IMG/VR virus record: IMGVR_UViG_3300028416_000004
Span: 168,515 to 232,514 of that record
Strand: one strand, 5' to 3'
DNA length: 64,000 nucleotides
Positions 11,883-60,622 of this stretch are shown piece after piece; position 1 is the first letter of the stretch, and every line of letters begins with the position of its first letter. The translations under genes were made by a program, and so were the position numbers. The notes under the pieces are model-generated. The model saw nothing but the letters and a program-made list of their open reading frames with translations, did no database searches and was not told where the DNA came from.

Positions 11883-11900
11883 TGAGATATATTTATATAT

Positions 11901-13993: not shown

Positions 13994-14037
13994 AATATTT
14001 TTTTTCTTTTTAAGAATATATTTTAATATTTATATAT

Positions 14038-16926: not shown

Positions 16927-18147
16927 TTATAACAAATTAAAATAGTTGTTTGTAGTAGGGTCGTATTTTAATTCAGAACTATTTCCACCATTAAATAAAT
17001 TATGGATTAATTTATCGTATGTTTTTGATATTAATGGGTTTGATACATGATATCTCCATAAAGATTGTTTATTACGTTCCTTATAGTATTCCAGATTTTT
17101 ATCGTGGTTTTCCAATATCCAGTTTAACATTTCACCACCTTTTCTTGAATCTGAGTTTTCATAATAATAACCTATATCTTTACACATTGGTGCGTTATGT
17201 AATACAGGATAACCCATATACGCAACATCCAAATAAAGATAGTTTAATGGGTTCATAATTTGATGAGAAACAACAATATCCAAAAACTGAGATACAACAT
17301 AAGAAGTTTGATATCTATGTTCCATTGTTACTTTTTTGTCCTTATATAAGTCCAAACTTTTAATAATTGATATGAATGGTGGATTTTTATCCAAACCACC
17401 TTTTTCGTGTTTTCCGTTTGTTATCATCAACTTATCAATCTTATTTTTACCAATTTCTGTACGATAAGATTCTTCTGCAATTAAAGTTGGTATAACAGCG
17501 GTTTTAACCATATTTAAGTTTGGTTCCATAATACCAATAACCTTCTTTTCTTTTGTTGGGTCGTATCTATGGTCTTTTTTATATTTTCCTTCTTTGCTTA
17601 ATTTATTGATTGAGTTTAGGGATGAATCCAAGAAACTATTATCCCATAAGAAAGGTACACTTATTGCGTTTGTTCTATAAAGTGTTTTAAAGTAACCACT
17701 ATTATTATAATCTTGTTGTGGCACATACCAAACTTCATCAACACCTTCATCAACAATATGTGGCTTTCCTTCTTTAAATAACATCTCTTCAATGAATAAA
17801 ACATAATTGTTACCACACTTATAATTAATAACTTTATTGGTTGGTTTTTGTTTCTTAAAATCTTTAATTGTTTCGTTTGATATTTGTGCTCCCATGGATA
17901 TAATTAAATCCATTTCTCTGTATTTATCTTTTAATAACGAAACATTAATTCCATCGAAGTGTTTTGGTGGGTTATTTAAATCAATATCCAACGTATTCAA
18001 TAAATAAATTTGATAATTCTTTTTTGATTTTTTTAATAGGTTAATCATCATAAGGATGTTTAGTTTCATCCCATTTGTCCACATTGATTCTTTTATATCG
18101 TTTAATGCTATGGTAATACCTATTTTTATATTTTCTGTATCCATCAT
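16927..18147 (-). CDS. DUF2827-like putative glycosyltransferase-fold protein
   Basis: IGITI...WTNGMKLN, IGIMEPNLNMVKT and NPLNYLYLDVAYMGYPVLHNAPMCKDIGYYYE match DUF2827 as recalled (no search run). Confidence 0.7.
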   Translation of the reverse strand: MMDTENIKIGITIALNDIKESMWTNGMKLNILMMINLLKKSKKNYQIYLLNTLDIDLNNPPKHFDGINVSLLKDKYREMDLIISMGAQISNETIKDFKKQKPTNKVINYKCGNNYVLFIEEMLFKEGKPHIVDEGVDEVWYVPQQDYNNSGYFKTLYRTNAISVPFLWDNSFLDSSLNSINKLSKEGKYKKDHRYDPTKEKKVIGIMEPNLNMVKTAVIPTLIAEESYRTEIGKNKIDKLMITNGKHEKGGLDKNPPFISIIKSLDLYKDKKVTMEHRYQTSYVVSQFLDIVVSHQIMNPLNYLYLDVAYMGYPVLHNAPMCKDIGYYYENSDSRKGGEMLNWILENHDKNLEYYKERNKQSLWRYHVSNPLISKTYDKLIHNLFNGGNSSELKYDPTTNNYFNLL

Positions 18148-18380
18148 ACTATTCTTGGTTTTTTTGTGTTTTTATAGATATCAGAGTTAAATTTCTTCAA
18201 GTCATCTAATGAAATATTTAGTTTTTTTCTCCACTTTGTTATAACGTGTTCGTAACCATTATTATATAACTCACATTCTTCTAAAACTGGGTTATCAACA
18301 CCTACTTCATCTATATCATAAGATGGGTCCGAAATTAAATATAAATCTCTTGTTATCTTATAATAAATATCTTTTTCCAT
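18144..18380 (-). CDS. Small hypothetical protein
   Basis: 78-aa ORF whose stop overlaps the DUF2827 start by 4 nt. Confidence 0.6.
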   Translation of the reverse strand: MEKDIYYKITRDLYLISDPSYDIDEVGVDNPVLEECELYNNGYEHVITKWRKKLNISLDDLKKFNSDIYKNTKKPRIV

Positions 18381-18418: not shown

Positions 18419-18446
18419 AAAAGGTCTAAATAATTTTAGACCTTTT
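18419..18446 (-). terminator. Intrinsic terminator closing the adhesin cassette array
   Basis: AAAGGTCTAAA-TAAT-TTTAGACCTTT hairpin with an A-run on the + strand (U-tract on the minus transcript), just after the 18466 stop. Confidence 0.75.
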
Positions 18447-18465
18447 ATATTGTTTTTTTTATTTA

Positions 18466-19152
18466 TTATAATCCAAATCTTCCTTTGGTTGTGTTATAAT
18501 TTTGTAATACTTCACTATCTGTTAACGCTCTATTGTAAATTAAAGTATTACCAATTTTTTTATCACTAGCAACATAACTACCACCTGGATAACTATTAAT
18601 AGATATACCTTGTGTTGTTTGTGCTTGACTACTAGAATTAGAAGACCCAAACAAAACTCCATTATGATATAGTGATACTGTAGATGTACCATTATAAGTA
18701 CCAACTATATTGTGCCAATTACCATCTTCTAAATCTGTTTTTAATATTTTAGGGGTTGCAGTACCATAAAAAAACTGTATACCACTATTCTCATAAAACC
18801 AGTATGTTCTAGAGTTAATACCTAAACCCTTACTTAATAAAACTTTATTATTAGATAATAAATTGAATTTAACCCACATAGAAACTGAAACAGAGATGGT
18901 ATTTAAAGAATCTGAATTTGATATTGAAACATAATCATTCACACCATCAAATGACACAATTCCTCCATTATCAGTTAAGTATGTTACACCATTGGTTAAT
19001 GTACCATCATTATTATTTGATGTTAAATCATTCCAAATAGTACCTGTACCTGGATATGATAATGTATTTCCTGCATCTAAATGTAACACTAACCCATCTG
19101 TTATTATATTTGATGTTTGTCTTGGTCTCACCCCTACTCTTGTTTGTGCCAT
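18466..19152 (-). CDS. LamG/concanavalin A-like lectin-domain protein (putative receptor-binding or decoration protein)
   Basis: GLVLHLDAG...SYPGTGTIWNDL, FDGVNDYV, SVSMWVK, WHNIVGTY and IYNRALTDSEV. Confidence 0.85.
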   Translation of the reverse strand: MAQTRVGVRPRQTSNIITDGLVLHLDAGNTLSYPGTGTIWNDLTSNNNDGTLTNGVTYLTDNGGIVSFDGVNDYVSISNSDSLNTISVSVSMWVKFNLLSNNKVLLSKGLGINSRTYWFYENSGIQFFYGTATPKILKTDLEDGNWHNIVGTYNGTSTVSLYHNGVLFGSSNSSSQAQTTQGISINSYPGGSYVASDKKIGNTLIYNRALTDSEVLQNYNTTKGRFGL

Positions 19153-19175
19153 AATATTTTGTTTTTTAATTTATA

Positions 19176-19835
19176 TTATTTTTGTTTTCCGTTTCCTGAA
19201 TTGTATAGTTGTGATACTTCTGTTGGTGTTAGTTCTCTGTTCCAAATACCTATTTCATCCATATTACCATTTAAGAATTGACTAGATGTTCTCCTACTTA
19301 ATATAAAACCATTTACAAAACCCAAAGATGTACAATCAGTGAATGTTGTTGTACCAGCAGAAATTAAATTACCATCCATATACATATTTAATAATTTAGT
19401 TGACTCATTCCAAGCGAAAGCAACATGTCTCCAAACATTATTACCTATAGTTAAACTTTGTGATAAATAACCCCCATTTGTTTTGAATGCGTATAAAATT
19501 ATTGATGTAAATTGGAAAGTAAAACCCATAGACCCATTTGAACCGAAATTAGGTGTTTGAAAAAAACAGGCCGTACCTGTATTATTTTTATACACCCATC
19601 CACTTACCGTAAAATCTCCAGTAATACCAACATCACCTGTGTATTGTACATAATCATTAACACCATCAAACTTAAATCCTTGATTAATTTTACCTGTGTC
19701 ATATGTTGTTCCATTAATTAATGTTAAATCGTGTCCATTCCCTGTTTGGTCTATTGGTGTTCCATCAGCTCTATAATAAGCCAATAATCCATCCCATATA
19801 CCAGGTCTTCTAACCCCCACTCTTGTTTGTGCCAT
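19176..19835 (-). CDS. LamG/concanavalin A-like lectin-domain protein
   Basis: FDGVNDYV, FTVSGWVY, WRHVAF, LYMDG-like MYMDG and GNMDEIGIWNRELT. Confidence 0.85.
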   Translation of the reverse strand: MAQTRVGVRRPGIWDGLLAYYRADGTPIDQTGNGHDLTLINGTTYDTGKINQGFKFDGVNDYVQYTGDVGITGDFTVSGWVYKNNTGTACFFQTPNFGSNGSMGFTFQFTSIILYAFKTNGGYLSQSLTIGNNVWRHVAFAWNESTKLLNMYMDGNLISAGTTTFTDCTSLGFVNGFILSRRTSSQFLNGNMDEIGIWNRELTPTEVSQLYNSGNGKQK

Positions 19836-19879
19836 TTTTTATATTGTTTTAATTTTATTTGTTATTTTTAAAGAAAAAA

Positions 19880-19905
19880 AAAGGGTTTAAATAAATAAAC
19901 CCTTT
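19880..19905 (-). terminator. Intrinsic terminator-like hairpin
   Basis: AAAGGGTTTA-N6-TAAACCCTTT 10-bp stem with an A-run on the + side. Confidence 0.65.
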
Positions 19906-19922
19906 GTTTAATCTTTTAATTT

Positions 19923-20129
19923 TTAGATTACCTCTTCAGTTGATGTCCATTCAGGTCCTTCACAAATTGTAATCATTTCTTCTTTTGTGTAATCTGTGAA
20001 TGAATCACCTTCAACGATGAATTTTGTTCCATCGATTGACTTTCTTACTGTATCAGCTGTTGAATAACCTGTACATAATGAAAAGTCGAATGTTGTAATC
20101 TCTGCGATGTCTTTAATTGCGTATCCCAT
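19923..20129 (-). CDS. Small acidic protein (putative fibre partner/chaperone)
   Basis: 68 aa; RKSIDGTKF...EW pattern; lies between adhesin genes. Confidence 0.65.
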   Translation of the reverse strand: MGYAIKDIAEITTFDFSLCTGYSTADTVRKSIDGTKFIVEGDSFTDYTKEEMITICEGPEWTSTEEVI

Positions 20130-20222
20130 TTTTTTTGTTTTTAATTAATTATTTGTTATTTTATTCAATTATAAATATCTACCAATTTTTAATAATAGAG
20201 ATATTTATATTTTTTTTTTTTT

Positions 20223-21656
20223 TTAAATTCCACCACCATCGGTGATTGTCCATAAATCACTTAAAATTAAGTTTGATTTTGCTGCTTCAGCTGGACTTCC
20301 TATTGTGTATTTGGACGTACCAAAGTTAACAGACAAACCACTTACGGGGTTAAGTGCGTTCCATGCAACTAATAACTTATCATATTCAGTTGTTGTTATA
20401 GTTGAACCTCTTAGGAAATCTTTCATATTAGAAACAGTAGATATATCCCAAGTGTCTAATCCAACAACATCACACACACCTAAACCATAAAATGGTTCAT
20501 ACATAATAACTGGTCCAGATGTTCTTATTGTAATACCTGTAACATCAATATAATCAGCACCACACCCATTAAACATACCAGCGTATCTATTACCAAATGT
20601 TGTACAATTACTTAAATCCCAACCACTTACATTTAATGATGTTAAATTAACTGTGGGTGAGAAGGTATTAGATGTTGAAGTGACTTGAGAAACATCCCAT
20701 CCTGTTAAATCTAAATCGCCTGATATACCACAACCACGGAACATACCAATAATATTAGTGAATGGTACTGTTATATCTTCAATACCAGTTATTGTGGTTA
20801 AATTAGGTGTAGCTTGGAAGGTACTTGAGAAATTAACACCTAGTGTTCTAAAAGTAACTCCACTTACATCAACAGAAGTCAATGATATGTTATAGTAGAA
20901 CATTTGTCTGAAATCACTACAATTAGATAAATCCATTCCTGACATATCTAAAGATGTTAATGATGTACAACCTCTAAAAGTTTGGTACATAGTATATACT
21001 TTAGAAGTGTTAAGTGTGTTAAACCCTGTTACTGTAGTTAATGAGGTACAATTATAAAATACCTCTCTAAATTGAACATTTGAAGTTGTGTTTAATTTAC
21101 ATCCAGTAAAATCTATTGAAGTTAATGATGTACAAGATTGGAAACCACCAGTATAACCCCAACCAAAAGAAGTACAAGAAGTTAAATCCCAACCAGCTAA
21201 AGACATTGTGGTTAATGATGTACAACCATTAAAAGCATTTGCTAATGTATTAACTAATGATGTATTTGGAATATCTGTGGCATAAATTTCTAAATTACTA
21301 CACCCTTGGAAAGAAGTACCCATACTTCTCCATTCATTATAACCCCACTGATTAACTGACATCAATTTTTCTCTATCAGTACCATTAAATTTAGGCCAAG
21401 GTAAATTACCTAAGACTTTAATTGTATAAATTCCTGGTGTTGAATAGACGTGAGTTAAATCAGTATCATTATATGATGTAATTGTTGATGTTGTACCATC
21501 ACCCCACTCAATCGTTGCATTATAAACACCTAAATTTCCAGCACCTAAAATAAATGTATCACTCGCACTACCAGCATTTTCAGTGTTTATTGTAAATATA
21601 AATTTTCTTTTTTCCAAGGAACCATCTTTGATTCCAACTCTTATCTGTGCTGCCAT
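20223..21656 (-). CDS. DUF285/BspA-like leucine-rich-repeat surface protein with N-terminal PKD-like domain
   Basis: IEWGDG...THVYSTPGIYTIKV (PKD-like), VNQWG, and repeated ~25-aa units (F..CTSLT.LD.SGWD.S.V). Confidence 0.8.
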   Translation of the reverse strand: MAAQIRVGIKDGSLEKRKFIFTINTENAGSASDTFILGAGNLGVYNATIEWGDGTTSTITSYNDTDLTHVYSTPGIYTIKVLGNLPWPKFNGTDREKLMSVNQWGYNEWRSMGTSFQGCSNLEIYATDIPNTSLVNTLANAFNGCTSLTTMSLAGWDLTSCTSFGWGYTGGFQSCTSLTSIDFTGCKLNTTSNVQFREVFYNCTSLTTVTGFNTLNTSKVYTMYQTFRGCTSLTSLDMSGMDLSNCSDFRQMFYYNISLTSVDVSGVTFRTLGVNFSSTFQATPNLTTITGIEDITVPFTNIIGMFRGCGISGDLDLTGWDVSQVTSTSNTFSPTVNLTSLNVSGWDLSNCTTFGNRYAGMFNGCGADYIDVTGITIRTSGPVIMYEPFYGLGVCDVVGLDTWDISTVSNMKDFLRGSTITTTEYDKLLVAWNALNPVSGLSVNFGTSKYTIGSPAEAAKSNLILSDLWTITDGGGI

Positions 21657-21658
21657 AA

Positions 21659-21880
21659 TTATTCTGTTATTTCTTCTTCTTCATTGTTATCAACATCAAT
21701 TCCATAAACATTTAATAACTCTGTTTTCCAAGATGTTTCATCATCGAATATTGTGTGATTCGGTAAACCTGTTTCGGTTTGTTGTGGTGGGTCAGTTTTT
21801 CCGTAGTGAACAATTGAATTATCTTCATTTGTTGCAATCCACCATTTTTCATTCATTTCTGTTTTTGTTACTATTATCAT
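21659..21880 (-). CDS. Small acidic protein, translationally coupled to the DUF285 gene
   Basis: 73 aa with an acidic tail; its stop is 2 nt before the 21656 start. Confidence 0.65.
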   Translation of the reverse strand: MIIVTKTEMNEKWWIATNEDNSIVHYGKTDPPQQTETGLPNHTIFDDETSWKTELLNVYGIDVDNNEEEEITE

Positions 21881-21908
21881 AATTTATTTTTTTATATAAA
21901 TATCATAT

Positions 21909-21933
21909 AAAAAGGGAGATATTCACCTCCCTT
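21909..21933 (-). terminator. Intrinsic terminator after BspA-like gene 2
   Basis: AAGGGAG-N8-CTCCCTT hairpin; the + strand A-run is a U-tract on the minus transcript. Confidence 0.75.
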
Positions 21934-21942
21934 CATTTTTTT

Positions 21943-22056
21943 TTATTAAACCGTTACAGTCCATCCTTTTGATGTTGCTATAGCAATATCTTCAGGAGTT
22001 AAATCAGCTGTACCAGGGTTATACCTAACATCTATTGTTTGAGATGTTGCGTTACC
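21943..22056. repeat. 114-bp perfect direct repeat, copy 1 (3' end of BspA-like gene 2)
   Basis: Identical by eye to 24501-24614 (offset 2558). Confidence 0.9.
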
Positions 22057-24144
22057 TAGGTTGTTAAATATGTTTATTAAAGCCAATCTAGACAATTTGT
22101 TTGTATTATAACTATGTGATTTAGTTAAACCAAAAATATTAGATTCAGATAATTCAAAATTACTTCTTAACATAAGGTTAGCACTTGTTACGTTAGACAT
22201 ATCTAAACTACCAATTTTTCTTAGTTCTATACACCTGTCAAAAGTATAAGTCACATTTGTCGTTAAAGAAAAATCCAAATCAGGAATAATTTCAATTTTA
22301 CTAGAATTAAATAAATAATGTAAATTTGATTGTGAATTACTTGTATTGATTTGTGGTATAGTTTTTAAACCTGTACCTATAAACATTGCGTATATATTTG
22401 CACTATCTGTGTTAAAGTCTGATGGTAATTCTCTTAATGATGAACAACTATGGAACATATAACTCATATTTGAAACACCTGAAGTATTAATTAAACCATT
22501 TGGAAATCCTTCTAATGAACTACAATATATAAACATATAGAATGTTGTAGTACAATTTTGTAAATCTAATAATGGTAAGTTTTTTAAATTACTACATCCT
22601 TGGAAAACATTACTTAAAACTGTTGCAGATGAAGTATCTAAACCAGTAACAGTTTCTAAACTACTACAATTTAAAAACATTTTATTCATAGTAGTCACAT
22701 TACCAGTGTTTTGTAAATTAACTTCTTTTATCTTATTACTACCATCAAACATTTGTATTGTACTTGTACAAGAAGTTAAATCCAATGATATTTTTTCTAA
22801 TGAAGAACAATCTTTAAACATATAATCACATTTCGTTGAGTTTGAAGTATCAAACCCTTCAGGTAATTCTAATATACCTGAATTAAAAAACATATATTGC
22901 ATATTTGTAACACTGTCTGTGTTTAATAAATGTATTTTTCTTAAAGATGAACAATAACCAAACATACCATACATATTTGTACAACCACTAGTATCAAAAT
23001 CTTTAGGTATTTCTAATAACGAATTACAACTATGAAACATATAACCCATATTTGAAACACCAGATGTGTTAATTAAACCATTTTCAAATCTAACAATAGA
23101 AGAACAACGAACAAACATATAGTATGCTGTAGTACAAGAAGTAAAATCTATTTGTGGTACATCAATTAAACTAGAGCAACTTTCAAATAAATTACTTAAA
23201 TTTGTTGCAGATGAAGTATCTAAACCTGTTACAGTTTCTAAACTACTACAACCTTTAAACATTTTATTCATGTTTGTCACATTACCAGTATTTTGTAAAT
23301 TAGCTTCTTTTATCTTATTACTACCCTCAAAAATTTGTACTGTATTTGTACAAGAAGTTAAATCTAACGATATTTTTTCTAATGAAGAACAATTTTTAAA
23401 CATACTACCACATTCCGTTAGGTTTGAAGTGTCAAAATCAGATGGTAACTCTATTAAATTAGAACACCCATTAAACATACTAGTACCATTTGTAATGTTT
23501 GTCATATCAAATGATACCAATTTTTTAATTTTTGAATTAACAAAAAGACTAGTCGCATTAGTTATACTATGTGAACCAATAAATTCGATTTGTTCCATTT
23601 TTTTATGGTACGCACTCCCAGGTCTAAAAATACTTATATTTTGACCAGCTATTTTAACATCCAAAATATTAGAATAAGTAGCTACGTTTAATTCAGATTG
23701 ATAAGCGTAAGCTAAATCAAATTTAGTTAATGCACCTGGTACTTGTGGTGTTATTTTAACAATTACTTGTCTATATCCTTCAGATGTTAATGTTGACTCA
23801 TCAAGGTCTTCCCAATTCAATACATGATTTACTCTGTGAGTCGCACTTGTTTTTGATATACCATCATAATTAATAATGTTTCCATCACCCCAATCAACAG
23901 TAAAATCATCATTAACTGCAAAACCAACATAACTTGGTGTGTTTTCATATACACTAACCAACATGTAAACAACTTCATCACCATTATTAACTTCAGGCAA
24001 CGTTAACCAATCACTTGGTCTCACATAAGTATCATTAAATGTTGTTGTTTTTTCATATGTATAATTTAATTTATTATATCTTACCGTAGCATTCGGTAAG
24101 TACATATATTTTGGGGCTTGAACCCCTCCTACTACTTGTGCCAT
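21946..24144 (-). CDS. BspA/DUF285-like leucine-rich-repeat adhesin, paralog 2
   Basis: 732 aa; DWGDG beta-domain followed by ~23-aa MF..CSSL..L..LDTS..TNM repeats; paralog of 24504..26726. Confidence 0.85.
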   Translation of the reverse strand: MAQVVGGVQAPKYMYLPNATVRYNKLNYTYEKTTTFNDTYVRPSDWLTLPEVNNGDEVVYMLVSVYENTPSYVGFAVNDDFTVDWGDGNIINYDGISKTSATHRVNHVLNWEDLDESTLTSEGYRQVIVKITPQVPGALTKFDLAYAYQSELNVATYSNILDVKIAGQNISIFRPGSAYHKKMEQIEFIGSHSITNATSLFVNSKIKKLVSFDMTNITNGTSMFNGCSNLIELPSDFDTSNLTECGSMFKNCSSLEKISLDLTSCTNTVQIFEGSNKIKEANLQNTGNVTNMNKMFKGCSSLETVTGLDTSSATNLSNLFESCSSLIDVPQIDFTSCTTAYYMFVRCSSIVRFENGLINTSGVSNMGYMFHSCNSLLEIPKDFDTSGCTNMYGMFGYCSSLRKIHLLNTDSVTNMQYMFFNSGILELPEGFDTSNSTKCDYMFKDCSSLEKISLDLTSCTSTIQMFDGSNKIKEVNLQNTGNVTTMNKMFLNCSSLETVTGLDTSSATVLSNVFQGCSNLKNLPLLDLQNCTTTFYMFIYCSSLEGFPNGLINTSGVSNMSYMFHSCSSLRELPSDFNTDSANIYAMFIGTGLKTIPQINTSNSQSNLHYLFNSSKIEIIPDLDFSLTTNVTYTFDRCIELRKIGSLDMSNVTSANLMLRSNFELSESNIFGLTKSHSYNTNKLSRLALINIFNNLGNATSQTIDVRYNPGTADLTPEDIAIATSKGWTVTV

Positions 24145-24184
24145 AATTTTTTATTTTTTTAATTAATTTGTTATTGTTTTTTTA

Positions 24185-24415
24185 TTATAATGTAGTTTCT
24201 TCTTCTGAAATATTATCTTCTTCTTCCTCTTCAGGTTTATTGAATATATCAATAAATCCTTCAGGTTCATCATCATACCATTTCCATCCATCAACTGGAT
24301 AGTTGTATGTATCTTTTTGTTCTTTTAATAAAGAATAATCACCATTATACACCGCATTCGGTGCATAATACCAACCTTCTTCGGTTTCTTTGTAAAATCC
24401 TAGTTTTAATTCCAT
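24185..24415 (-). CDS. Small acidic aromatic-rich partner protein, copy 2
   Basis: 76 aa; near-identical to 26756..26980 (FYKETEEGWYYAPNAVYNGDYSLLKEQKDTY). Confidence 0.75.
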   Translation of the reverse strand: MELKLGFYKETEEGWYYAPNAVYNGDYSLLKEQKDTYNYPVDGWKWYDDEPEGFIDIFNKPEEEEEDNISEEETTL

Positions 24416-24461
24416 TTTTCTTTTTTTTATTTTTTAATTTGTTATTTTTTTTATAAATATG

Positions 24462-24490
24462 AAAAAAGAGAGGGAGAATACCCCCTCTTT
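24462..24490 (-). terminator. Intrinsic terminator after BspA-like gene 1
   Basis: AGAGGG (24469-74) pairs with CCCTCT (24483-88); the A6 on + is a U-tract on the minus transcript. Confidence 0.75.
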
Positions 24491-24500
24491 AATTATTAAA

Positions 24501-24614
24501 TTATTAAACCGTTACAGTCCATCCTTTTGATGTTGCTATAGCAATATCTTCAGGAGTTAAATCAGCTGTACCAGGGTTATACCTAACATCTATTGTTTGA
24601 GATGTTGCGTTACC
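24501..24614. repeat. 114-bp perfect direct repeat, copy 2 (3' end of BspA-like gene 1)
   Basis: Identical by eye to 21943-22056. Confidence 0.9.
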
Positions 24615-26726
24615 CAAGTTGTTGAAAATGTTAACTAATTCAGTTCTAGATAACTTACCATGAAGATAAGTATGTGATTTAGTTAAACCATATATATCAG
24701 ACTTACCAATACCATAGTTATTTCTGAACATATTTGTTGCGTTAGTTACAGATGAAAAATCCAAACTACCTATTTTTCTAAGTCTTGAACAATAACCAAA
24801 CATTTCTCTACTATCTGTAATATTGGAAGTATCCAAATCAGGAATTTCTTCAATACCTGATTGTCTAAACATATAATAACCACTAGTTATATTTGAAGTA
24901 TTAATAGATGGTATTGTTTTTAAATTAGATGTTGTTTGAAACATATAAAGCATATTTGTTGCACTATCTGTATTAAAATCAGATGGTATTTCTATTAAAT
25001 TTGAACAATAACCAAACATACTTTGCATATTCGTTACACCTGATGTATTAATTATATCATTATCAAATCTTATGATTGAATTACACCCATAAAACATACT
25101 TGAAGTCCTTGTACAACTTTGTAAGTTAATTTTAGGTAAATCCATTAATTTATTACAACCATAAAACATTTGATGTGTTATTGTCATTGAACTTGTATCT
25201 AAACCAGTTATTTTAACTAAGTTTGAACAGCCGTAAAAAGCATCTTGTCCACTTGTTACATTGGATGTATTTATTAAATTAATTTCTCTTATCTGAGAAG
25301 AATTTTTAAACATATTGTGCATACTTGTACAACTAGATAAGTCTAATGTTGGTAACGTTTTTAATTTATAACAATGCGAAAACATCTCTCCAGCGTGTGT
25401 TATATTAGAGAAATCTAAATCAGGAATTTCTTCAATATCTGCTTGTCTAAACATATAATAACCACTAGTTATATTTGAAGTATTTAATAAAGGTATTCTT
25501 CTTAAAGAACTACATTTATTAAACATATAAGTCATATTTGTTGCACTAGATGTATCAAAATCTTTAGGTATTTCTATTAAATTTGAACAATGACCAAACA
25601 TACCTTGCATATTCGTTACACCTGATGTATTAATTATATCATTATCAAATCTTATGATTGAATTACACGCATAAAACATACTTGAAGTCCTTGTACAACT
25701 TTGTAAGTTAATTTCAGGTAAATCCATTAATTTATTACAACCATAAAACATTTGATGTGTTATTGTCATTGAACTTGTATCTAAACCAGTTATTTTAACT
25801 AAGTTTGAACAGCCGTAAAAAGCATCTTGTCCATTTGTTACATTGGATGTATTTATTAAATTAATTTCTCTTATCTGAGAAGAATGTTTAAACATATTTT
25901 GCATACTTGTACAACTTGTCAAATCTAATGTTGGTAATTTTTCTAATGAACTACAATACGCAAACATGTCATATACATTTGTTAAACTTGTTAAATCCAT
26001 ATCTTCTGGTAACTCTATTAATTTAGTACATTGTCTAAACATATAATAACCATTAGTGATATTAGACATATCTAAAGAAACTATTTTTTTAATAGTTGAA
26101 CCATTAAACATACTGTTACTAGCCACAATACTATTTGAACCAACAAACTCAAATTGTTCGAATTTTGGGTTATTACCACCACCAACTTTTAAATAATTGA
26201 TGTTTTGTCCAGCCATTTTCATATCCAAAAGACCTGAAAGACCTACACCACCATATACACCATTAAGCATTGATTGATAGAATGATTGATTATTGAAATG
26301 AGTTAAACCACCAGGAACTTGTGGTGTGATTTTAACAATTGCTTGTCTATATCCTTCTGATGTTAATGTTGATGGGTCAATGTCATCCCAATTTATTGAA
26401 TAACCTGTTTTACCATCAACAGCATTCACACTTGTACTATTTTGGTCATAATTAATAATATTTCCATCACCCCAATCAACAGTATAATCACCTCTAACTG
26501 AGAATACGATACTATTTGGGTTATTTTCATAAATTGCAACCAACATGTAAATTACTTCATCACCTTCATTTACCGCTGGTAAATCCAACCAATCCGCTGG
26601 TCTTGTATAAGTTTTGTATGGTGTTGTATCGATTGGATAATTATAATTTAATTTATTATATCTTACCGTAGCGTTAGGTAAGTAAATATATTTAGGTGCT
26701 TGTACACCTCCTACTACTTGTGCCAT
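24504..26726 (-). CDS. BspA/DUF285-like leucine-rich-repeat adhesin, paralog 1
   Basis: 740 aa; same N-terminus (MAQVVGGVQAPKY) and C-terminus as 21946..24144; LRR-like repeats. Confidence 0.85.
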   Translation of the reverse strand: MAQVVGGVQAPKYIYLPNATVRYNKLNYNYPIDTTPYKTYTRPADWLDLPAVNEGDEVIYMLVAIYENNPNSIVFSVRGDYTVDWGDGNIINYDQNSTSVNAVDGKTGYSINWDDIDPSTLTSEGYRQAIVKITPQVPGGLTHFNNQSFYQSMLNGVYGGVGLSGLLDMKMAGQNINYLKVGGGNNPKFEQFEFVGSNSIVASNSMFNGSTIKKIVSLDMSNITNGYYMFRQCTKLIELPEDMDLTSLTNVYDMFAYCSSLEKLPTLDLTSCTSMQNMFKHSSQIREINLINTSNVTNGQDAFYGCSNLVKITGLDTSSMTITHQMFYGCNKLMDLPEINLQSCTRTSSMFYACNSIIRFDNDIINTSGVTNMQGMFGHCSNLIEIPKDFDTSSATNMTYMFNKCSSLRRIPLLNTSNITSGYYMFRQADIEEIPDLDFSNITHAGEMFSHCYKLKTLPTLDLSSCTSMHNMFKNSSQIREINLINTSNVTSGQDAFYGCSNLVKITGLDTSSMTITHQMFYGCNKLMDLPKINLQSCTRTSSMFYGCNSIIRFDNDIINTSGVTNMQSMFGYCSNLIEIPSDFNTDSATNMLYMFQTTSNLKTIPSINTSNITSGYYMFRQSGIEEIPDLDTSNITDSREMFGYCSRLRKIGSLDFSSVTNATNMFRNNYGIGKSDIYGLTKSHTYLHGKLSRTELVNIFNNLGNATSQTIDVRYNPGTADLTPEDIAIATSKGWTVTV
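24830..25940. repeat. Intragenic tandem duplication with 582-nt (194-aa) period
   Basis: For example 25025 aligns to 25607 and 24841 to 25423; a ~330-bp core differs at only about 5 positions. Confidence 0.85.
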
Positions 26727-26755
26727 AATTTTCTATTTTTTTAATTAATTTGTTA

Positions 26756-26980
26756 TTATAATTCACCTTCAGGTGTTTCTTCAGTTATTTCTTCTTCAGG
26801 TTTATTGAATATATCAATAAATCCTTCAGGTTCATCATCATACCATGACCACCCATCCGTTGGATAAGTGTAGGTATCTTTTTGTTCTTTTAATAAAGAA
26901 TAATCACCATTATACACTGCATTTGGTGCATAATACCAACCTTCTTCGGTTTCTTTGTAAAATCCTGGTTTTGTTTCCAT
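26756..26980 (-). CDS. Small acidic aromatic-rich partner protein, copy 1
   Basis: 74 aa; paralog of 24185..24415 (offset about 2565). Confidence 0.75.
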   Translation of the reverse strand: METKPGFYKETEEGWYYAPNAVYNGDYSLLKEQKDTYTYPTDGWSWYDDEPEGFIDIFNKPEEEITEETPEGEL

Positions 26981-27012
26981 TTTTCTTTTTTTTTATTTTT
27001 TAATTTGTTATT

Positions 27013-27591
27013 TTATAGTTTTATTAACACATCATGAGTAATTAATCGAATTAATTTTGTTGTTTCAGGGTTATTTTTATGTGTTTTTCTTATAGAAGAA
27101 TAAAACCCCATTCCAGACCAAGCATATTCAACCAATATTCCGTTTGGTTTTAACTCATCAACAATTTTTTGATACATACCCATCAATTCATTTTCATTCT
27201 TAAATGGTGTGTAACAATAAACAATATCATATTTACCATAATTATGATTCATAATATCATCAACATACAAATCGATATTATTATCCCAATAACCTTTTAG
27301 GTTTTTATTAAAAAAATCAACATACTCTTTATACTTCTCAACACCAAAAAAATTAAAAGTTTTGTCCTCAAATTTTTTGGATTCAATATAAAAGTTATAC
27401 ATCATTGTACCCAAACCAAATCCAGCATCACATACGTTAAATGTTGTTTTTGATGGTGTTAAATTTATCATTCTGGGAAAAATATTTTCGAATTGGGTTG
27501 TTGTTGGTTCGATATAATACCACTCATTGGTGTTATCAACAAAATCATTATTGTTTAATTCTTGTGATTTTATTTTATATTCTTTTTTCAT
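27013..27591 (-). CDS. Class I SAM-dependent methyltransferase
   Basis: VCDAGFGLG (motif I), FFGVEK, YVDDI and YDIVYCY. Start placed at Met 27591 because the listed ATG at 27627 lies inside a terminator hairpin. Confidence 0.75.
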   Translation of the reverse strand: MKKEYKIKSQELNNNDFVDNTNEWYYIEPTTTQFENIFPRMINLTPSKTTFNVCDAGFGLGTMMYNFYIESKKFEDKTFNFFGVEKYKEYVDFFNKNLKGYWDNNIDLYVDDIMNHNYGKYDIVYCYTPFKNENELMGMYQKIVDELKPNGILVEYAWSGMGFYSSIRKTHKNNPETTKLIRLITHDVLIKL

Positions 27592-27604
27592 AAGTGTTAA
27601 AAAT

Positions 27605-27640
27605 AAAAAGAGGGAGGAGTATTTCATCCTCCCCTTTTTT
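27605..27640 (-). terminator. Intrinsic terminator after the long fibre gene
   Basis: GGGAGGA (27612-18) pairs with TCCTCCC (27627-33), flanked by A- and T-runs. Confidence 0.8.
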
Positions 27641-27694: not shown

Positions 27695-30445
27695 TTATGC
27701 TAATGGAGTAAAGTTACCATAATAATCAGGGTTTACAGCAATTGCTTCTTGTCCGTAAATCACAACTGATGCTCCAGTTTCAGGTGCTACATTGAACGTG
27801 AAGGTACCTTGAGTGTTACCTTTAGCATCTACTACTGAACTGAAAGTATAATCAACATCTCTTTCTTGTAATAAACCATTTAAGTAGATTGCTCCACTTC
27901 CATTAATTAATACACTGAAATCTACAGTTACACCATCTCCGACTGCACTATTTAAAATCACAAACTTCCCGACATTAACAGCGTTTAAAATCATAGATTT
28001 GATTTCAACTAATGCTCCGTTAACACCATCTTTGATAGCTTGGTCGATTGAGTTTTGAACTGAAATCTCAGCAGATAACACAACTTCTAATGAAGCGTCA
28101 GCAGCAAGTCTTGCAGCTTTCTCTACAGAGTCAGCAGCTTCGAATGCAGCTGTTACAGCAGCGTCACCAGCAATTCTTGCGTTTTGTTCAGCTAAGTCAG
28201 CAGATTCTCTAGCAGCAACTTCAGTTGAGATATCAGCGTTTACTTTAGCTTCTAATGAAGCGTCAGCAGCTTCTCTAGCAGCAACTTCAGTTGAGATATC
28301 AGCGTTTACTTTACCTTCTAGTGAAGCGTCAGCAGATTCTCTAGCAGCAACTTCAGTTGATAAAGCAGCGTCATTACTCAATACGTAAGAAGCAAATGCT
28401 TGGTCGTTTTCAGTATCAACAGAGTTGATTAGTGTTACGATTTCAGCAAATGAATCTTTATCAGCATCAGAAGCCTCTAAGATAGCATCAATTCTACTTT
28501 TTTCAGTAGATACTTTAGCCTCTAATGAAGCGTCTCCTGAAACTCTCGCTGATTCTTCAGCAGATACGTCAGCATCGATTTTAGCTTCTAATGAACCATC
28601 AGCAGCAACTCTTGAACTAGCTTCAGAACTGATTGCAGCTTCTCTAGCAGCAACTTCAGTAGAGTATTCAATAGCGTGAGTTGATTCCTCAGTAGACAAT
28701 CTTAATTCTAATGAAGCATCAGCAGCAGCTCTAATACTAGCTTCAGCAGATACGTCACCTGTTACAGTAGCATCAAAGTTATCTAAAATTCCTTTAGTAA
28801 TGAATGATAAAGCATCATATCCAGCTAAACTATCTGGTTGAACACCAGCTTTGTTTAAACCTTCGAATGTTCTTTCTCCAGCTGTACCTTCAGCAATAAC
28901 ATCTTTCATTCTAATGTTGTTATCACCATCAACTTCGATTGTTACATCATCAGTTAAAGGTAATGCATCGATTTCAGCTTCCAATGAAGTATCACTAGCT
29001 AAACGAGTTGATTCTTCAGCATCTAATTCACTAACAACTTCTGCGAATGAATCGATTGAGTTTAAGTCAGTGTTAGCGATGATTGAAGAAACCTCACTTG
29101 ATAATACTGTAGCGATTGAATCTTCAGCTTCAGTAGCTCTTGAAATCTCAGCAGCTAATGCAACATCTAATGAACCATCAGCAGCAATTCTTGCAGCTTC
29201 TTCACTAGCTATAGATTCATTTAAATCCTTAGACTCAAGTTCGATTTTTTCATTTAATGAAGCATCAGCAGATACTCTTGAACTTACTTCAGATTCGATA
29301 GCTGTATCATGCTGAGCATCTTTAGCTGTAGCTCTAGCTATCTCAGCGTTTAATTCATTTTGAAGGTCAGTATCTGTATTTATCGCTCTAGTTATTTCGT
29401 CATCGATTTTAGCTTCTAATGAACCATCAGTAGCAATTCTTGCAGATTCTTCAGCTGACATGTCAGCATCGATTTTAGCTTCTAATGAACCATCAGCAGC
29501 AATTCTTGCAGATTCTTCAGCTGACATGTCAGCATCGATTTTAGCTTCTAATGAAGCGTCAGCAGCTTCTCTAGTAGCTTTCTCTACAGAGTCAGCAGCT
29601 TCGAATGCAGCCGTTACAGCAGCATCACCAGCAATTCTTGCGTTTTGTTCAGCTAAGTCAGCAGATTCTCTAGCAGAAACCTCAGTTGAGATATCAGCGT
29701 TTACTTTACCTTCTAATGAAGCGTCACCTGAAATTCTTGAAGATACTTCAGTTGATAAAGCAGCATCATTAGATAATACATAAGATGCAAATGCTTGGTC
29801 ATTTTCAGTATCAACAGAGTTGATTAATGTTACGATTTCAGCGAATGAATCTTTATCAGCATCAGAAGCCTCTAAAATAGCATCAATTCTACTTTTTTCA
29901 GTAGATACTTTAGCCTCTAATGAAGCGTCTCCTGAAACTCTCGCTGATTCTTCAGCAGATACGTCAGCATCGATTTTAGCCTCTAATGAAGCGTCTCCTG
30001 AAACTCTCGCTGATTCTTCAGCAGATACGTCAGCATCGATTTTAACTTCTAATGAACCTTCAGCATCTTTAGCTCTAGTAGTTTCATCACTGATTGATGT
30101 CTCTAATGAACCTTCAGCATCTTTAGCTCTAGCAACTTCAGCATCGATAGCTGCATCATGTTCAGCATCTTTTGCTTCAGCTCTAGCAACTTCAGCAGCG
30201 ATTTCAGCATCATGTTCAGCATCTTTTGCTTCAGCTCTACTCTTCTCGTTGGTAATTGCTTGTTCTAAATTTTGTAAGTCGTCAACTAACCCAGGTAAAT
30301 CTGATTTCTCAATACCAATTGGTCTTAAAATTTCAGCATCAGTCAATTTACCGTCTGATTGTTTATTTAAGATAATCCTAGTTCCACCTGTAAAATTGTT
30401 TGTTGGCTCTACTGGTGCTTCTAATAAAAATAATCTATTTTCCAT
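27695..30445 (-). CDS. Long repetitive coiled-coil tail fibre/whisker-like protein
   Basis: 916 aa Ala/Glu/Ser-rich 18/21/22-aa repeats (EESAR.AAD.SLEAKID), DSFAEIV motifs, and a C-terminal IYLNGLLQ..DY..F..AP..G domain also seen twice in 31808..32521. Confidence 0.7.
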   Translation of the reverse strand: MENRLFLLEAPVEPTNNFTGGTRIILNKQSDGKLTDAEILRPIGIEKSDLPGLVDDLQNLEQAITNEKSRAEAKDAEHDAEIAAEVARAEAKDAEHDAAIDAEVARAKDAEGSLETSISDETTRAKDAEGSLEVKIDADVSAEESARVSGDASLEAKIDADVSAEESARVSGDASLEAKVSTEKSRIDAILEASDADKDSFAEIVTLINSVDTENDQAFASYVLSNDAALSTEVSSRISGDASLEGKVNADISTEVSARESADLAEQNARIAGDAAVTAAFEAADSVEKATREAADASLEAKIDADMSAEESARIAADGSLEAKIDADMSAEESARIATDGSLEAKIDDEITRAINTDTDLQNELNAEIARATAKDAQHDTAIESEVSSRVSADASLNEKIELESKDLNESIASEEAARIAADGSLDVALAAEISRATEAEDSIATVLSSEVSSIIANTDLNSIDSFAEVVSELDAEESTRLASDTSLEAEIDALPLTDDVTIEVDGDNNIRMKDVIAEGTAGERTFEGLNKAGVQPDSLAGYDALSFITKGILDNFDATVTGDVSAEASIRAAADASLELRLSTEESTHAIEYSTEVAAREAAISSEASSRVAADGSLEAKIDADVSAEESARVSGDASLEAKVSTEKSRIDAILEASDADKDSFAEIVTLINSVDTENDQAFASYVLSNDAALSTEVAARESADASLEGKVNADISTEVAAREAADASLEAKVNADISTEVAARESADLAEQNARIAGDAAVTAAFEAADSVEKAARLAADASLEVVLSAEISVQNSIDQAIKDGVNGALVEIKSMILNAVNVGKFVILNSAVGDGVTVDFSVLINGSGAIYLNGLLQERDVDYTFSSVVDAKGNTQGTFTFNVAPETGASVVIYGQEAIAVNPDYYGNFTPLA
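28110..29995. repeat. Nested intragenic repeats (63/66-nt units; ~450-bp block duplicated at 1395/1461-nt offset)
   Basis: 28411 aligns to 29806 (offset 1395) and 28116 to 29577 (offset 1461); 63-nt tandem units at ~29403-29540 and ~29900-30050. Confidence 0.85.
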
Positions 30446-60547: not shown

Positions 60548-60622
60548 TTTTATTTATTTTATAAAAAAATCTTTATTATAAATATTAGGTTTTTTTGTTT
60601 TTTATTTATAAATTGCATAATT

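What the first reader, a model, noticed from the sequence alone, without database searches (positions are those of the whole stretch)
18466..27012. Modular array of small-partner plus adhesin cassettes: a plug-in receptor-binding or decoration system
Seen, reading the minus strand: small A, BspA-like 1, terminator, TATTTATA, small A', BspA-like 2, terminator, TATTTATA, small B, DUF285/PKD protein, TATTTATA, small C, hairpin, LamG1, LamG2, terminator. Four unrelated or duplicated 68-76-aa acidic genes each sit upstream of a large ligand-binding-fold gene. Cassettes are insulated by their own promoter motif and terminator. Two cassettes form a ~2.56-kb tandem duplication with conserved ends and a diverged middle. 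Inference: an expandable, swappable repertoire of surface-binding proteins that attach to one virion site, tuning host range or adhesion without DGR or invertase machinery.
Basis: partly seen in the sequence, partly recalled or inferred. Interest (0 to 1): 0.78.

Follow-up and report, generated by a model that had tools for sequence, protein, structure and literature searches.

The report
Swappable adhesin-plus-partner gene cassettes in phage
An uncultured marine jumbo phage carries a fast-changing row of gene cassettes, each pairing a sugar- or surface-binding protein with its own tiny acidic partner; it probably serves as a changeable toolkit for sticking to hosts, and the two partner families turn out to be widespread and undescribed.

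Summary
On the minus strand of 18,419-27,012 lie nine genes: five large ones (two DUF285-type LRR proteins, one PKD-like/DUF285 protein, two LamG proteins) and four acidic 68-76-aa ones. They are punctuated by four intrinsic terminators and by TATTTATA motifs. The first two cassettes are a ~2.56-kb tandem duplication.

New evidence:
- Five close relatives keep the flanks but differ in cassette number and type. One indel breakpoint lies inside the shared GATATTTAT motif.
- Small A belongs to an unannotated family of at least 604 clusters. In 56 of 56 other phage loci it sits directly downstream of the same LRR family.
- Small C sits next to LamG genes in 25 of 29 other loci.
- All five large proteins, and no other ORF in the window, start with MA(A)Q-xx-[VG]G[VI].
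- An island-specific leader, ATAACAAAT, precedes six of the nine genes.

Best reading: a hyperplastic island next to tail-fibre-like genes, encoding putative adhesins with cognate assembly partners, reshuffled by recombination at conserved regulatory borders (PeSL-like). Virion attachment, a single docking site and the role of the small proteins remain inferences.

Verdict: new variant of a known kind, moderately interesting.

The parts
27013..27591 (-). Conserved left flank: a methyltransferase-like gene, 192 aa from the likely true start. It is present upstream of the first small A in all relatives.
   Evidence: Weak Methyltransf_31 hit. The 192-aa form is seen in L064 and L066, and the ATG listed for the window lies inside the hairpin at 27611-27634.
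26756..26980 (-). Small A: 74 aa, pI 4.05. It has a roughly 50-aa beta-rich domain and a disordered acidic tail. The leader box ATAACAAAT lies at 27003-27011.
   Evidence: AF2 model pLDDT 83. Family of at least 604 clusters.
24504..26726 (-). LRR protein 1 (740 aa). Order of parts: N-terminal MAQVVGGV peptide, conserved N-domain (RPxDW...DWGDG...GYRQ), DUF285 leucine-rich repeats with an internal 582-nt duplication, and a conserved C-terminal KGWTVTV module. Leader box at 26748-26756.
24465..24490 (-). Intrinsic terminator after LRR protein 1. It is followed by TATTTATA (24452-24459) and the leader box ATAACAAAT (24437-24445).
24185..24415 (-). Small A' (76 aa), 84% identical to A, with a different acidic tail type.
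21946..24144 (-). LRR protein 2 (732 aa), a paralogue of protein 1: 58.5% identical overall, with near-identical ends. Leader box at 24166-24174.
21912..21933 (-). Intrinsic terminator after LRR protein 2, followed by GATATTTATA (21895-21904). This junction is the crossover point seen in relative L066.
21659..21880 (-). Small B (73 aa, pI 4.12). It lies 2 nt upstream of the next gene and is found only in close relatives, always directly upstream of the PKD-like/DUF285 gene.
20223..21656 (-). PKD-like/DUF285 LRR protein (477 aa; 315-316 aa in relatives). It starts MAAQIRVGI.
19923..20129 (-). Small C (68 aa, pI 4.05), with an invariant DTVRKS motif. TATTTATA lies at 20170-20177 and the leader box at 20151-20159. 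Its own terminator follows at 19880-19905.
   Evidence: AF2 model pLDDT 81.
19176..19835 (-). LamG protein 1 (219 aa), starting MAQTRVGV. Leader box at 19857-19865.
18466..19152 (-). LamG protein 2 (228 aa), starting MAQTRVGV. It is 34% identical to LamG1.
18419..18446 (-). Intrinsic terminator that closes the island.
18144..18380 (-). Conserved right flank: a 78-aa ORF, followed by the DUF2827 gene at 16927-18147. Both are present in all relatives, whatever the island holds.

Best explanation
This is a hyperplastic gene island beside tail-fibre-like genes of an uncultured marine jumbo phage (232-kb IMG/VR contig).

Content. It encodes a changeable set of lectin-like proteins, putatively virion-borne and adhesive: DUF285 leucine-rich-repeat proteins, a PKD-like/DUF285 protein and LamG proteins. 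Each type comes with a cognate small acidic protein.

The small proteins. Small A is the obligate genomic partner of this LRR family, and small C of free-standing LamG proteins, across hundreds of uncultured phages. They most likely act as dedicated assembly partners: a chaperone, or a subunit that stays bound to a conserved end of the large protein. This is analogous by position to tail-fibre assembly proteins. They are unlikely to determine specificity.

How the island changes. Genes are framed by conserved regulatory borders: an intrinsic terminator, the genome-wide TATTTATA upstream motif, the island-specific AATAACAAAT leader, and a shared ATG-GCA-CAA... start. Homologous recombination at these borders and at the conserved gene ends duplicates, deletes and exchanges cassettes. 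Meanwhile the repeat-bearing middles diverge.

Status of each step:
- Shown: the anatomy, the pairings, the variation between relatives, and one breakpoint inside the motif.
- Inferred: virion location, adhesion or host-range role, chaperone role, promoter function of the motifs, and a docking role for the N-terminal peptide.
For: Anatomy and domains.

Island plasticity with conserved flanks:
- Window: 2x A-LRR, B-DUF285 (477 aa), C, LamG, LamG.
- L010: 3x A-LRR, B-DUF285 (316 aa), C, fused LamG-LamG of 485 aa.
- L066: A-LRR, C, LamG449, C, LamG224.
- L064/L065: A-LRR and C only.
- L020: B-DUF285, then the flank directly.
- The L066 crossover lies inside GATATTTAT.
- Paralogue ends are mosaic. 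The first 40 aa of L010's extra copy are 100% identical to LRR1, while its middle is 28-55% identical.

Pairing:
- The A family has at least 604 clusters and 244 IMG/VR relatives.
- In 56 of 56 evaluable other loci an LRR-family gene ends -19 to +23 nt upstream of the A-family gene. Seven further independent metagenome contexts agree; the six with DNA carry a DUF285/LRR-family gene.
- The C family has a LamG gene directly upstream in 24 of 29 loci and directly downstream in 10 of 29.

Tail context:
- The window neighbours are a 916-aa coiled-coil fibre-like protein and genes hitting PHROG 'tail fiber' and 'virion structural' families.
- In other phages the LRR/A pair lies next to sheath and T4 baseplate genes or just before lysis genes.
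- LamG homologues are annotated 'virion structural protein' in S-PM2 (C-terminus of p176). In Flavobacterium phage immuto they are annotated 'structural protein' directly after a tail-fibre-like gene.

Chaperone analogy:
- A 162-aa A-family member (P0053) carries an extra C-terminal domain. That domain is homologous (E 8e-14) to ORFs sitting directly after the P2-type tail fibre gene of Achromobacter phage Mano, and after the last baseplate-adjacent 'structural protein' gene (gp28) of Pseudomonas phage KLEP17-4.
- A-family distances track the LRR C-terminal 60 aa (Spearman 0.65; partial 0.51) better than the N-domain (0.47; partial 0.10) across 55 pairs.
- The two A tail variants do not co-vary with the LRR orthologue between the window and L010. 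A therefore probably recognises a conserved part of the LRR protein.

Expression:
- In two seawater metatranscriptome runs the contig carrying the methyltransferase-like gene and small A has k-mer depth 157 and 106. The LRR2 body has 33 and 24. In a DNA run the figures are 17 and 14.
- RNA contigs covering only small C are deeper than their neighbours.
Against: - No proteomic or structural evidence places any of these proteins in a virion. 'Structural' labels on distant homologues are database annotations.
- Neither small protein matches a known chaperone family or fold. Pfam, PHROGs, PDB sequence and Foldseek searches found only uncharacterised phage proteins.
- LRR solenoids and LamG domains are usually monomeric and may not need a trimerisation chaperone.
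- In this lineage the small gene lies upstream of the large one, separated from the preceding large gene by a terminator. This is the reverse of the canonical order.
- Small C has its own terminator, and in L064 it occurs with no LamG gene at all.
- The stronger A-to-C-terminus correlation could simply reflect physical linkage, because the gene for A abuts the C-terminal coding end in those loci.
- The depth differences come from assembled contigs, not reads, and RNA libraries can contain DNA.
Confidence: 0.6

Rival explanations
1. All five large proteins dock interchangeably, or in competition, on one virion site through the shared N-terminal MA(A)Q-xx-[VG]G[VI] peptide. The small acidic proteins are adaptors that link each adhesin to that site.
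For: - The peptide is found on all five large proteins, which belong to three unrelated families, and on no other ORF in the window.
- It is conserved in relatives.
- Its codons differ between genes while the residues are kept. That points to selection at the protein level.
- The peptide is specific to this lineage. Free-standing LamG proteins and LRR proteins of other phages have other N-termini.
Against: - Eight residues are too few to demonstrate a docking module.
- The same stretch overlaps a conserved translation start (ATT-ATG-GCA-CAA), so it may be an RNA-level or recombination-joint feature.
- The small proteins are family-specific partners: A with LRR and C with LamG, in phages that lack this peptide. 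That fits a role tied to the large protein's own fold rather than to a common site.
- No virion data were obtained.
Confidence: 0.25
2. The proteins are non-essential decorations of the capsid or tail, in the manner of Hoc. They would mediate weak adherence to particles, mucus or cell-surface glycans rather than define host range.
For: - Ig/PKD-like, LamG and LRR folds are typical of accessory adhesins.
- The cassettes are dispensable: relatives lack LamG, or B-DUF285, altogether.
- LRR and LamG domains are usually monomeric.
Against: - In other phages the same gene pairs sit inside baseplate, fibre and sheath modules, not next to capsid genes.
- Nothing here distinguishes the primary receptor-binding protein from an accessory adhesin.
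Confidence: 0.2
3. The genes are not structural. The large proteins act in or on the infected cell, for example in surface remodelling or superinfection exclusion. The small acidic proteins are regulators or inhibitors, for example masking partners or transcription factors.
For: - Small C is a separately terminated, apparently abundant transcript with an invariant DTVRKS motif.
- Small C can occur without LamG.
- Small-gene contigs are deeper than large-gene contigs in RNA runs.
Against: - No signal peptides or transmembrane segments are evident by eye in the N-termini; no predictor was run.
- Linkage to fibre, baseplate and sheath genes is consistent across unrelated phages.
- LamG homologues are annotated as virion proteins.
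Confidence: 0.1

Closest known systems
PeSL (promoter-early stem-loop) mobile regulatory cassettes in hyperplastic regions of T4-type phages (Arbiol et al. 2010, PMC2839356; Comeau et al. 2014, PMC4122927)
   Same: - Composite terminator-plus-promoter-like motifs frame variable genes.
- Close relatives differ by insertion, deletion or replacement of whole units.
- A breakpoint lies inside the short shared motif.
   Different: - The motif here is TATTTATA plus an AATAACAAAT leader, not the PeSL motif, which pairs an early promoter with a stem-loop.
- The cargo is large putative adhesins with partner genes, not small ORFans.
- Conserved coding ends also serve as recombination substrates.
- The phage is not a demonstrated member of the T4 group.
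Tail fibre plus assembly protein gene pairs (lambda/P2/Mu Tfa; T4-superfamily gp38, PMC3157838)
   Same: - A small gene is tightly linked to a receptor-binding gene, normally directly downstream. The A family is so placed in 56 of 56 loci.
- The partner tracks the distal, C-terminal end of the large protein.
- A 162-aa A-family member (P0053) carries a domain found in the Tfa slot of a P2-like phage.
   Different: - There is no sequence or fold similarity to Caudo_TAP, DUF4376 or gp38.
- The large proteins are LRR or LamG, not trimeric beta-helical fibres.
- In this lineage the small gene lies upstream.
Multi-receptor-binding-protein phages with tandem tailspike genes and shared N-terminal anchor modules (for example CBA120-type phages and Klebsiella jumbo phages; from my own knowledge, not tested here)
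   Same: - Several binding proteins are encoded in a row.
- N-termini are conserved while the binding parts are divergent.
- Copy number varies among relatives.
   Different: - Those systems use enzymatic tailspikes with N-terminal anchor domains of tens to hundreds of residues and a proven branched assembly.
- Here the common element is an 8-residue peptide, the binders are lectin-like, and assembly is unproven.
BspA-type / DUF285 leucine-rich repeat surface proteins of bacteria, jumbo phages and giant viruses
   Same: - Pfam DUF285 and LRR_5 hits.
- Homologues occur in jumbo phages PAU, LAh10, D3 and pir03 (PMC7765460).
   Different: This subfamily has its own N-domain (RPxDW...DWGDG...GYRQ) and a C-terminal KGWTVTV module, and it always travels with a small A-family gene.

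Membership tests
DUF285 / BspA-type LRR proteins (Pfam PF03382, PF13306) | Match to the family profile above Pfam's gathering score. | tested here: met
   PF03382 scores 195, 160 and 79 bits against a cut-off of 25. PF13306 scores 28.5 bits against 27.7, for the 477-aa protein only.
Laminin_G_3 / concanavalin-A-like lectin (PF13385) | Match to the profile above the gathering score. | tested here: met
   70.5 and 61.1 bits against a cut-off of 27.6.
PKD domain (PF00801 / PF18911) in the 477-aa protein | Match to the profile above the gathering score. | tested here: inconclusive
   16.9 and 17.4 bits, below the cut-offs of 23.5 and 27. A DWGDG motif is present.
PeSL mobile regulatory cassettes | A composite stem-loop terminator followed by a promoter motif, flanking variable genes. 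| tested here: met
   The window has two junctions of hairpin followed by TATTTATA (24465-24490 with 24452-24459; 21912-21933 with 21895-21902), plus TATTTATA before small C. All are conserved in relatives.
PeSL mobile regulatory cassettes | Indels between close relatives have their breakpoints in the motif. | tested here: met
   One junction was resolved. L066 follows the window's LRR2 terminator up to GATATTTA, then continues with the small C leader. The other junctions were not resolved at base level.
PeSL mobile regulatory cassettes | The promoter part is a T4-type early (sigma-70-like) promoter, and the host genome is a T4-type phage. | tested here: not met
   No sigma-70-like excess was found: 76 sites against 89.5 expected. 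The recurring motif is TATTTATA. A relative carries a T4 gp13-like gene, but membership of the T4 group was not established.
Tail fibre assembly proteins (Caudo_TAP PF02413; DUF4376) | Sequence or fold match to the family. | tested here: not met
   No Pfam hit, even at E = 10 for longer A-family members. Foldseek against the PDB gave no hit at E <= 0.001. Only a weak shape match, TM 0.37, to a DUF4376 cluster.
Tail fibre assembly proteins (Caudo_TAP PF02413; DUF4376) | Encoded directly downstream of the fibre or receptor-binding gene it serves. | tested here: met
   This holds in other phages: 56 of 56 loci for the A family, and 24 of 29 for the C family after LamG. It does not hold in the window's own lineage, where A lies upstream of the LRR gene.
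Multi-RBP branched tailspike systems | The proteins are present in the virion and attached through N-terminal anchor domains. | not testable with these tools
   Only a shared 8-residue N-terminal peptide was seen. No proteomic or structural data are available.
Diversity-generating retroelement or invertase-driven switching | A reverse transcriptase with a template/variable repeat pair, or an invertase with inverted repeats flanking the variable part. | not tested
   No such domain appeared among the window proteins scanned with Pfam, but not every ORF was scanned. The inverted repeats found in the region are short and AT-rich.

The most novel reading that the evidence does not exclude
The island is a natural plug-and-play display system. 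Any binding domain that acquires three things can be expressed, folded with its own small acidic partner, and docked on one common tail site. The three are the lineage-specific leader, the MA(A)Q-xx-[VG]G[VI] N-terminal tag, and the terminator/promoter borders. The phage population would then shuffle host-adhesion modules of unrelated folds (LRR, PKD-LRR, LamG) through a single interface. The two small-protein families would be previously unrecognised, widespread classes of fold-specific partner for non-fibrous receptor-binding proteins.
Probability: 0.25. Interest if true: 0.75.

Novelty: new variant of a known kind. Interest (0 to 1): 0.55.

Why it matters
Receptor-binding proteins of uncultured marine and freshwater phages are largely unannotated.

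- **New markers.** Two small-protein families (A-like, at least 604 clusters; C-like, dozens of IMG/VR loci) are near-obligate neighbours of DUF285-LRR and LamG genes. They give a simple genomic marker for candidate adhesin genes in metagenomes. They also define two testable protein-protein pairs.
- **A case of motif-mediated shuffling.** Five configurations in close relatives, with a breakpoint resolved to a 9-nt regulatory motif, show this process acting on large putative host-interaction genes in a jumbo phage, not only on small ORFans.
- **A possible docking tag.** If the shared N-terminal peptide proves to be a docking tag, it would be a compact handle for engineering or predicting adhesin display in laboratory phage-host systems.

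Tried and rejected
**Searches that gave nothing useful**
- Megablast of the neighbouring structural block against GenBank phages: no match.
- tblastn of small A and small C from the window against isolated phages: no match. Only more typical family members hit (S-SKS1, Mano and others).
- Pfam and PHROGs for all four small proteins and for longer A-family members: nothing.
- PDB sequence-profile search for the A family: chance hits only.
- Foldseek of the confident AF2 models of A and C against the PDB: no hit at E <= 0.001. BFVD and ESM Atlas returned only uncharacterised phage proteins.
- Source names for A-family clusters: 'hypothetical protein' or none.
- Language-model look-alike search: uninformative.
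- The search for related loci with the 142-sequence A alignment failed because no stretch was conserved enough. It was repeated with the 15-sequence alignment.

**Ideas tested and rejected**
- Small B or small C as divergent copies of A: rejected (hhalign E 0.065 and 0.23).
- TATTTATA as a T4-type late promoter: rejected as stated. In gene orientation the motif reads TATTTATA, not TATAAATA.
- DUF4376 kinship of the longer A-family members, an idea from memory: not supported by Pfam.
- Read or contig evidence for copy-number variants within a sample. The apparent 'joints' are explained by copy-1 sequences (small A and the end of the methyltransferase-like gene; the A'/LRR1 junction) lying outside the 6-kb stretch and being laid on their paralogues. 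No real variant junction could be claimed.
- Co-variation of the A tail type with the flanking LRR orthologue: none, in either direction.

Full report
**Source and setting**

The window is part of IMG/VR contig IMGVR_UViG_3300028416_000004 (232.5 kb). Two further IMG/VR contigs carry the same sequence. Across this locus they are 99.9-100% identical to the window. Public runs that hold it are seawater metagenomes and metatranscriptomes.

The DNA is 24-33% G+C, apart from one repeat-rich gene at 39%. Window genes include a peptidoglycan amidase, PrsW, a fused Mre11/Rad50-like protein and an SNF2 helicase. A relative encodes a T4 gp13-like neck protein and a family-B DNA polymerase. It is therefore a large tailed phage. 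It has no close cultured relative.

**Checking the observation**

- Pfam assigns DUF285 to the 740-, 732- and 477-aa proteins (E 2.6e-58, 2.4e-47, 2.3e-22). The 477-aa protein also passes LRR_5 (BspA type) and has sub-threshold PKD hits.
- The 219- and 228-aa proteins are Laminin_G_3.
- The four small proteins are strongly acidic, pI 4.05-4.12.
- A and A' are 84% identical. B and C are not detectably related to A.
- Terminator-like hairpins follow LRR1, LRR2, small C and LamG2. The region holds 21 such sites against 3.0 expected.
- Direct repeats with 2558-2582-nt spacing confirm the tandem duplication.
- The paralogues are 80% identical over the first 40 residues, 100% over the last 28, and 42-65% between.

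So the description is correct. I add four corrections.

1. TATTTATA is a genome-wide upstream signal, not a mark of the island. There are 40 hits against 24 expected. Half lie in the 8% of non-coding DNA, and 15 of those lie 3-86 nt upstream of a start codon in gene orientation.
2. Small C has its own terminator in the window and in all relatives.
3. Six of the nine genes carry an island-specific leader box, ATAACAAAT, about 25-33 nt before the ATG. All six minus-strand occurrences in 64 kb are here.
4. All five large proteins, and no other ORF of 40 aa or more in the window that starts with ATG-GC (Met-Ala), begin with MA(A)Q-xx-[VG]G[VI].

**Relatives: the island is hypervariable between conserved flanks**

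The left flank is a 192-aa methyltransferase-like gene preceded by a coiled-coil fibre-like gene. The right flank is a 78-aa ORF, a DUF2827 gene and an alanyl-tRNA-synthetase-like gene. These flanks are conserved, while the content between them differs.

| Genome | Island content |
|---|---|
| Window | A-LRR, A-LRR, B-DUF285 (477 aa), C, LamG, LamG |
| L010 | A-LRR three times, B-DUF285 (316 aa), C, fused LamG-LamG (485 aa) |
| L066 | A-LRR, C, LamG449, C, LamG224 |
| L064/L065 | A-LRR and C only |
| L020 | B-DUF285 (315 aa), then straight to the flank |

- The extra LRR copy in L010 is a mosaic. Its first 40 residues are identical to LRR1 and its last 28 are 92% identical, but its middle is only 28-55% identical.
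- The L066 junction follows the window's LRR2 terminator up to GATATTTA. It then continues with the small C leader, so the crossover lies inside the shared motif.

This behaviour matches what has been described for PeSL promoter/terminator cassettes in the hyperplastic regions of T4-type phages (PMC2839356, PMC4122927). The motif here is different, and the cargo is large.

**The small partners are real, ancient and family-specific**

*Small A*
- A profile of small A finds 604 clusters at 50% identity among 1.8 billion representatives, and 244 relatives in IMG/VR.
- In 56 of 56 evaluable, non-redundant IMG/VR loci, the gene directly upstream (-19 to +23 nt) belongs to the same LRR family. None has an LRR gene downstream.
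- Seven other metagenome contexts show the same order; in the six with DNA the upstream gene hits the LRR profile or Pfam DUF285, or shows the N-domain motifs. They include a myovirus where the pair lies next to sheath and baseplate genes, and a phage where it precedes the lysis genes.
- That LRR family shares an N-domain (RPxDW...DWGDG...GY[KR]Q) and a C-terminal KGWT[VI]T module.

*Small C*
- It has 41 IMG/VR relatives.
- In 29 non-redundant loci, 24 have a LamG gene directly upstream and 10 have one directly downstream. These usually sit within arrays of 1-8 LamG paralogues of about 230 aa, next to fibre and sheath genes.

*Small B*
- It is confined to close relatives and always lies 2-4 nt upstream of the PKD-like/DUF285 gene.

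The usual order elsewhere, however, is large gene then small gene. The small-upstream order, with terminators in between, is particular to this lineage.

**What the small proteins might do**

- AF2 gives confident models. A (pLDDT 83) is a roughly 50-residue beta-rich domain with a disordered acidic tail. C (pLDDT 81) is a small alpha/beta domain.
- Neither matches any solved structure or named family. The function therefore rests on context.
- The slot directly after a fibre gene is where tail-fibre assembly proteins are encoded.
- A 162-aa A-family member (P0053) carries an extra C-terminal domain. That domain is homologous (E 8e-14) to ORFs in two cultured phages. In the P2-like Achromobacter phage Mano the ORF follows the tail fibre gene directly. 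In Pseudomonas phage KLEP17-4 it follows the 'structural protein' gene gp28 that ends the baseplate block.
- Across 55 LRR/A pairs, A distances follow the LRR C-terminal 60 residues (Spearman 0.65; partial 0.51 given the N-domain) rather than the N-domain (0.47; partial 0.10). Physical linkage of the two coding segments could produce the same pattern.
- Between the window and L010, the two A tail variants are distributed without regard to the neighbouring LRR orthologue. A therefore probably recognises a conserved part of the LRR protein, not its variable repeats.

I conclude, as an inference, that A and C are dedicated assembly partners, either a chaperone or a bound accessory subunit.

**Are the large proteins virion adhesins?**

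The evidence is indirect.
- The window neighbours are a 916-aa coiled-coil fibre-like protein and genes hitting PHROG 'tail fiber' and 'virion structural' families.
- LamG homologues form the C-terminus of S-PM2 p176, annotated 'virion structural protein'. Two tandem 'structural protein' genes follow a tail-fibre-like gene in Flavobacterium phage immuto.
- The LRR/A pair lies in tail modules elsewhere.
- No proteomic data for this phage were obtained.

**Expression**

Only assembled contigs of older runs could be laid on the sequence.
- In two metatranscriptome runs, the contig carrying the methyltransferase-like gene and small A has depth 157 and 106. The LRR2 body has 33 and 24. In a DNA run the values are 17 and 14.
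- Two RNA runs yield short contigs covering just small C (about 19920-20182). These are deeper than their neighbours, and in one RNA run (X12) the LamG genes are almost uncovered.
- This fits real transcription, with the small genes more abundant and termination after small C. It is weak evidence.
- The apparent joints in that output come from paralogous sequences outside the stretch I laid. They are not variants.

**The shared N-terminal peptide**

- It is conserved in relatives.
- It is encoded by different codons in different genes.
- It is absent from LamG and LRR proteins of other phages.

This is compatible with a lineage-specific docking or processing tag. It is the best argument for the 'one site' idea. 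It also overlaps a conserved translation start region, so an RNA-level or recombination-joint role cannot be excluded.

**Verdict**

Modularity, pairing and gain/loss are shown. Virion attachment, a single docking site and an adaptor role are not.
- The closest known concepts are PeSL-type regulatory cassettes, tail-fibre/assembly-protein gene pairs, and multi-RBP phages.
- The locus works like a combination of these. It fails the sequence-level membership tests for PeSL promoters and for known Tfa families.
- I rate it a new variant of a known kind, with moderate interest. The most useful novelty is the two widespread, unannotated partner families.

Noticed in passing
window 27695-30445 (-): A 916-aa coiled-coil, fibre-like protein made of near-perfect internal repeats (DASLEAKIDADVSAEESARVSG-type). 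Its G+C is 39% against about 27% for the genome. Its length varies among relatives (916, 854, 770 aa; a 543-aa ORF in L066 looks N-terminally incomplete).
   Followed up: partly
window 24970-25269 vs 25552-25851: An internal 582-nt (194-aa) tandem duplication inside LRR protein 1, at about 84-88% identity. The repeat region is itself expanding.
   Followed up: partly
window 16062-16907 (+): A 281-aa gene matching only the N-terminal catalytic part of class II alanyl-tRNA synthetase (PF01411, E 6.8e-21). It is conserved in relative L066 (280 aa), so it appears to be a truncated AlaRS-like phage gene.
   Followed up: no
window, whole (e.g. 1105-1112, 11890-11897, 14027-14034, 60603-60610): TATTTATA is a genome-wide motif lying 3-86 nt upstream of start codons. 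The leaders in and beside this island are A/T-rich with no obvious Shine-Dalgarno sequence. This suggests an unusual promoter or translation-initiation signal, or a host that does not use Shine-Dalgarno pairing.
   Followed up: partly
window 27611-27634 / 27591-27627: The ATG listed for the 204-aa methyltransferase-like ORF lies inside a terminator hairpin. Relatives start 12 codons later (192 aa).
   Followed up: yes
protein P0013 (from; no locus fetched): A 1779-aa protein contains about 15 tandem copies of the small-A domain. It also has Big_9 and Imm50-like stretches and a C-terminal DUF6383. The A domain therefore also exists as a repeat module in a giant protein.
   Followed up: no
protein P0208: A 984-aa compost-metagenome protein combines the LRR family's N-domain, DUF285 repeats and a Laminin_G_3 domain in one chain. 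The two binder types of this island can therefore be fused.
   Followed up: no
L035/L036 978-4157: Another phage has LamG, small C and LamG, then a 490-aa LRR-family protein followed by an unrelated 68-aa ORF. LamG and LRR modules are therefore neighbours in other lineages too.
   Followed up: no
window 47556-51056 (+) and 51053-53563 (-): A fused Mre11-like phosphoesterase and Rad50-like ATPase gene (1166 aa), lying next to an 836-aa protein with an ART-PolyVal ADP-ribosyltransferase domain.
   Followed up: no
window 26694-26709 (-): Codons 6-11 of LRR protein 1 form a G+C-rich hairpin (AGGTGTACAAGCACCT). An internal GGAGG lies just after the start codon. These could be an RNA-level feature of the conserved 5' end.
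   Followed up: no
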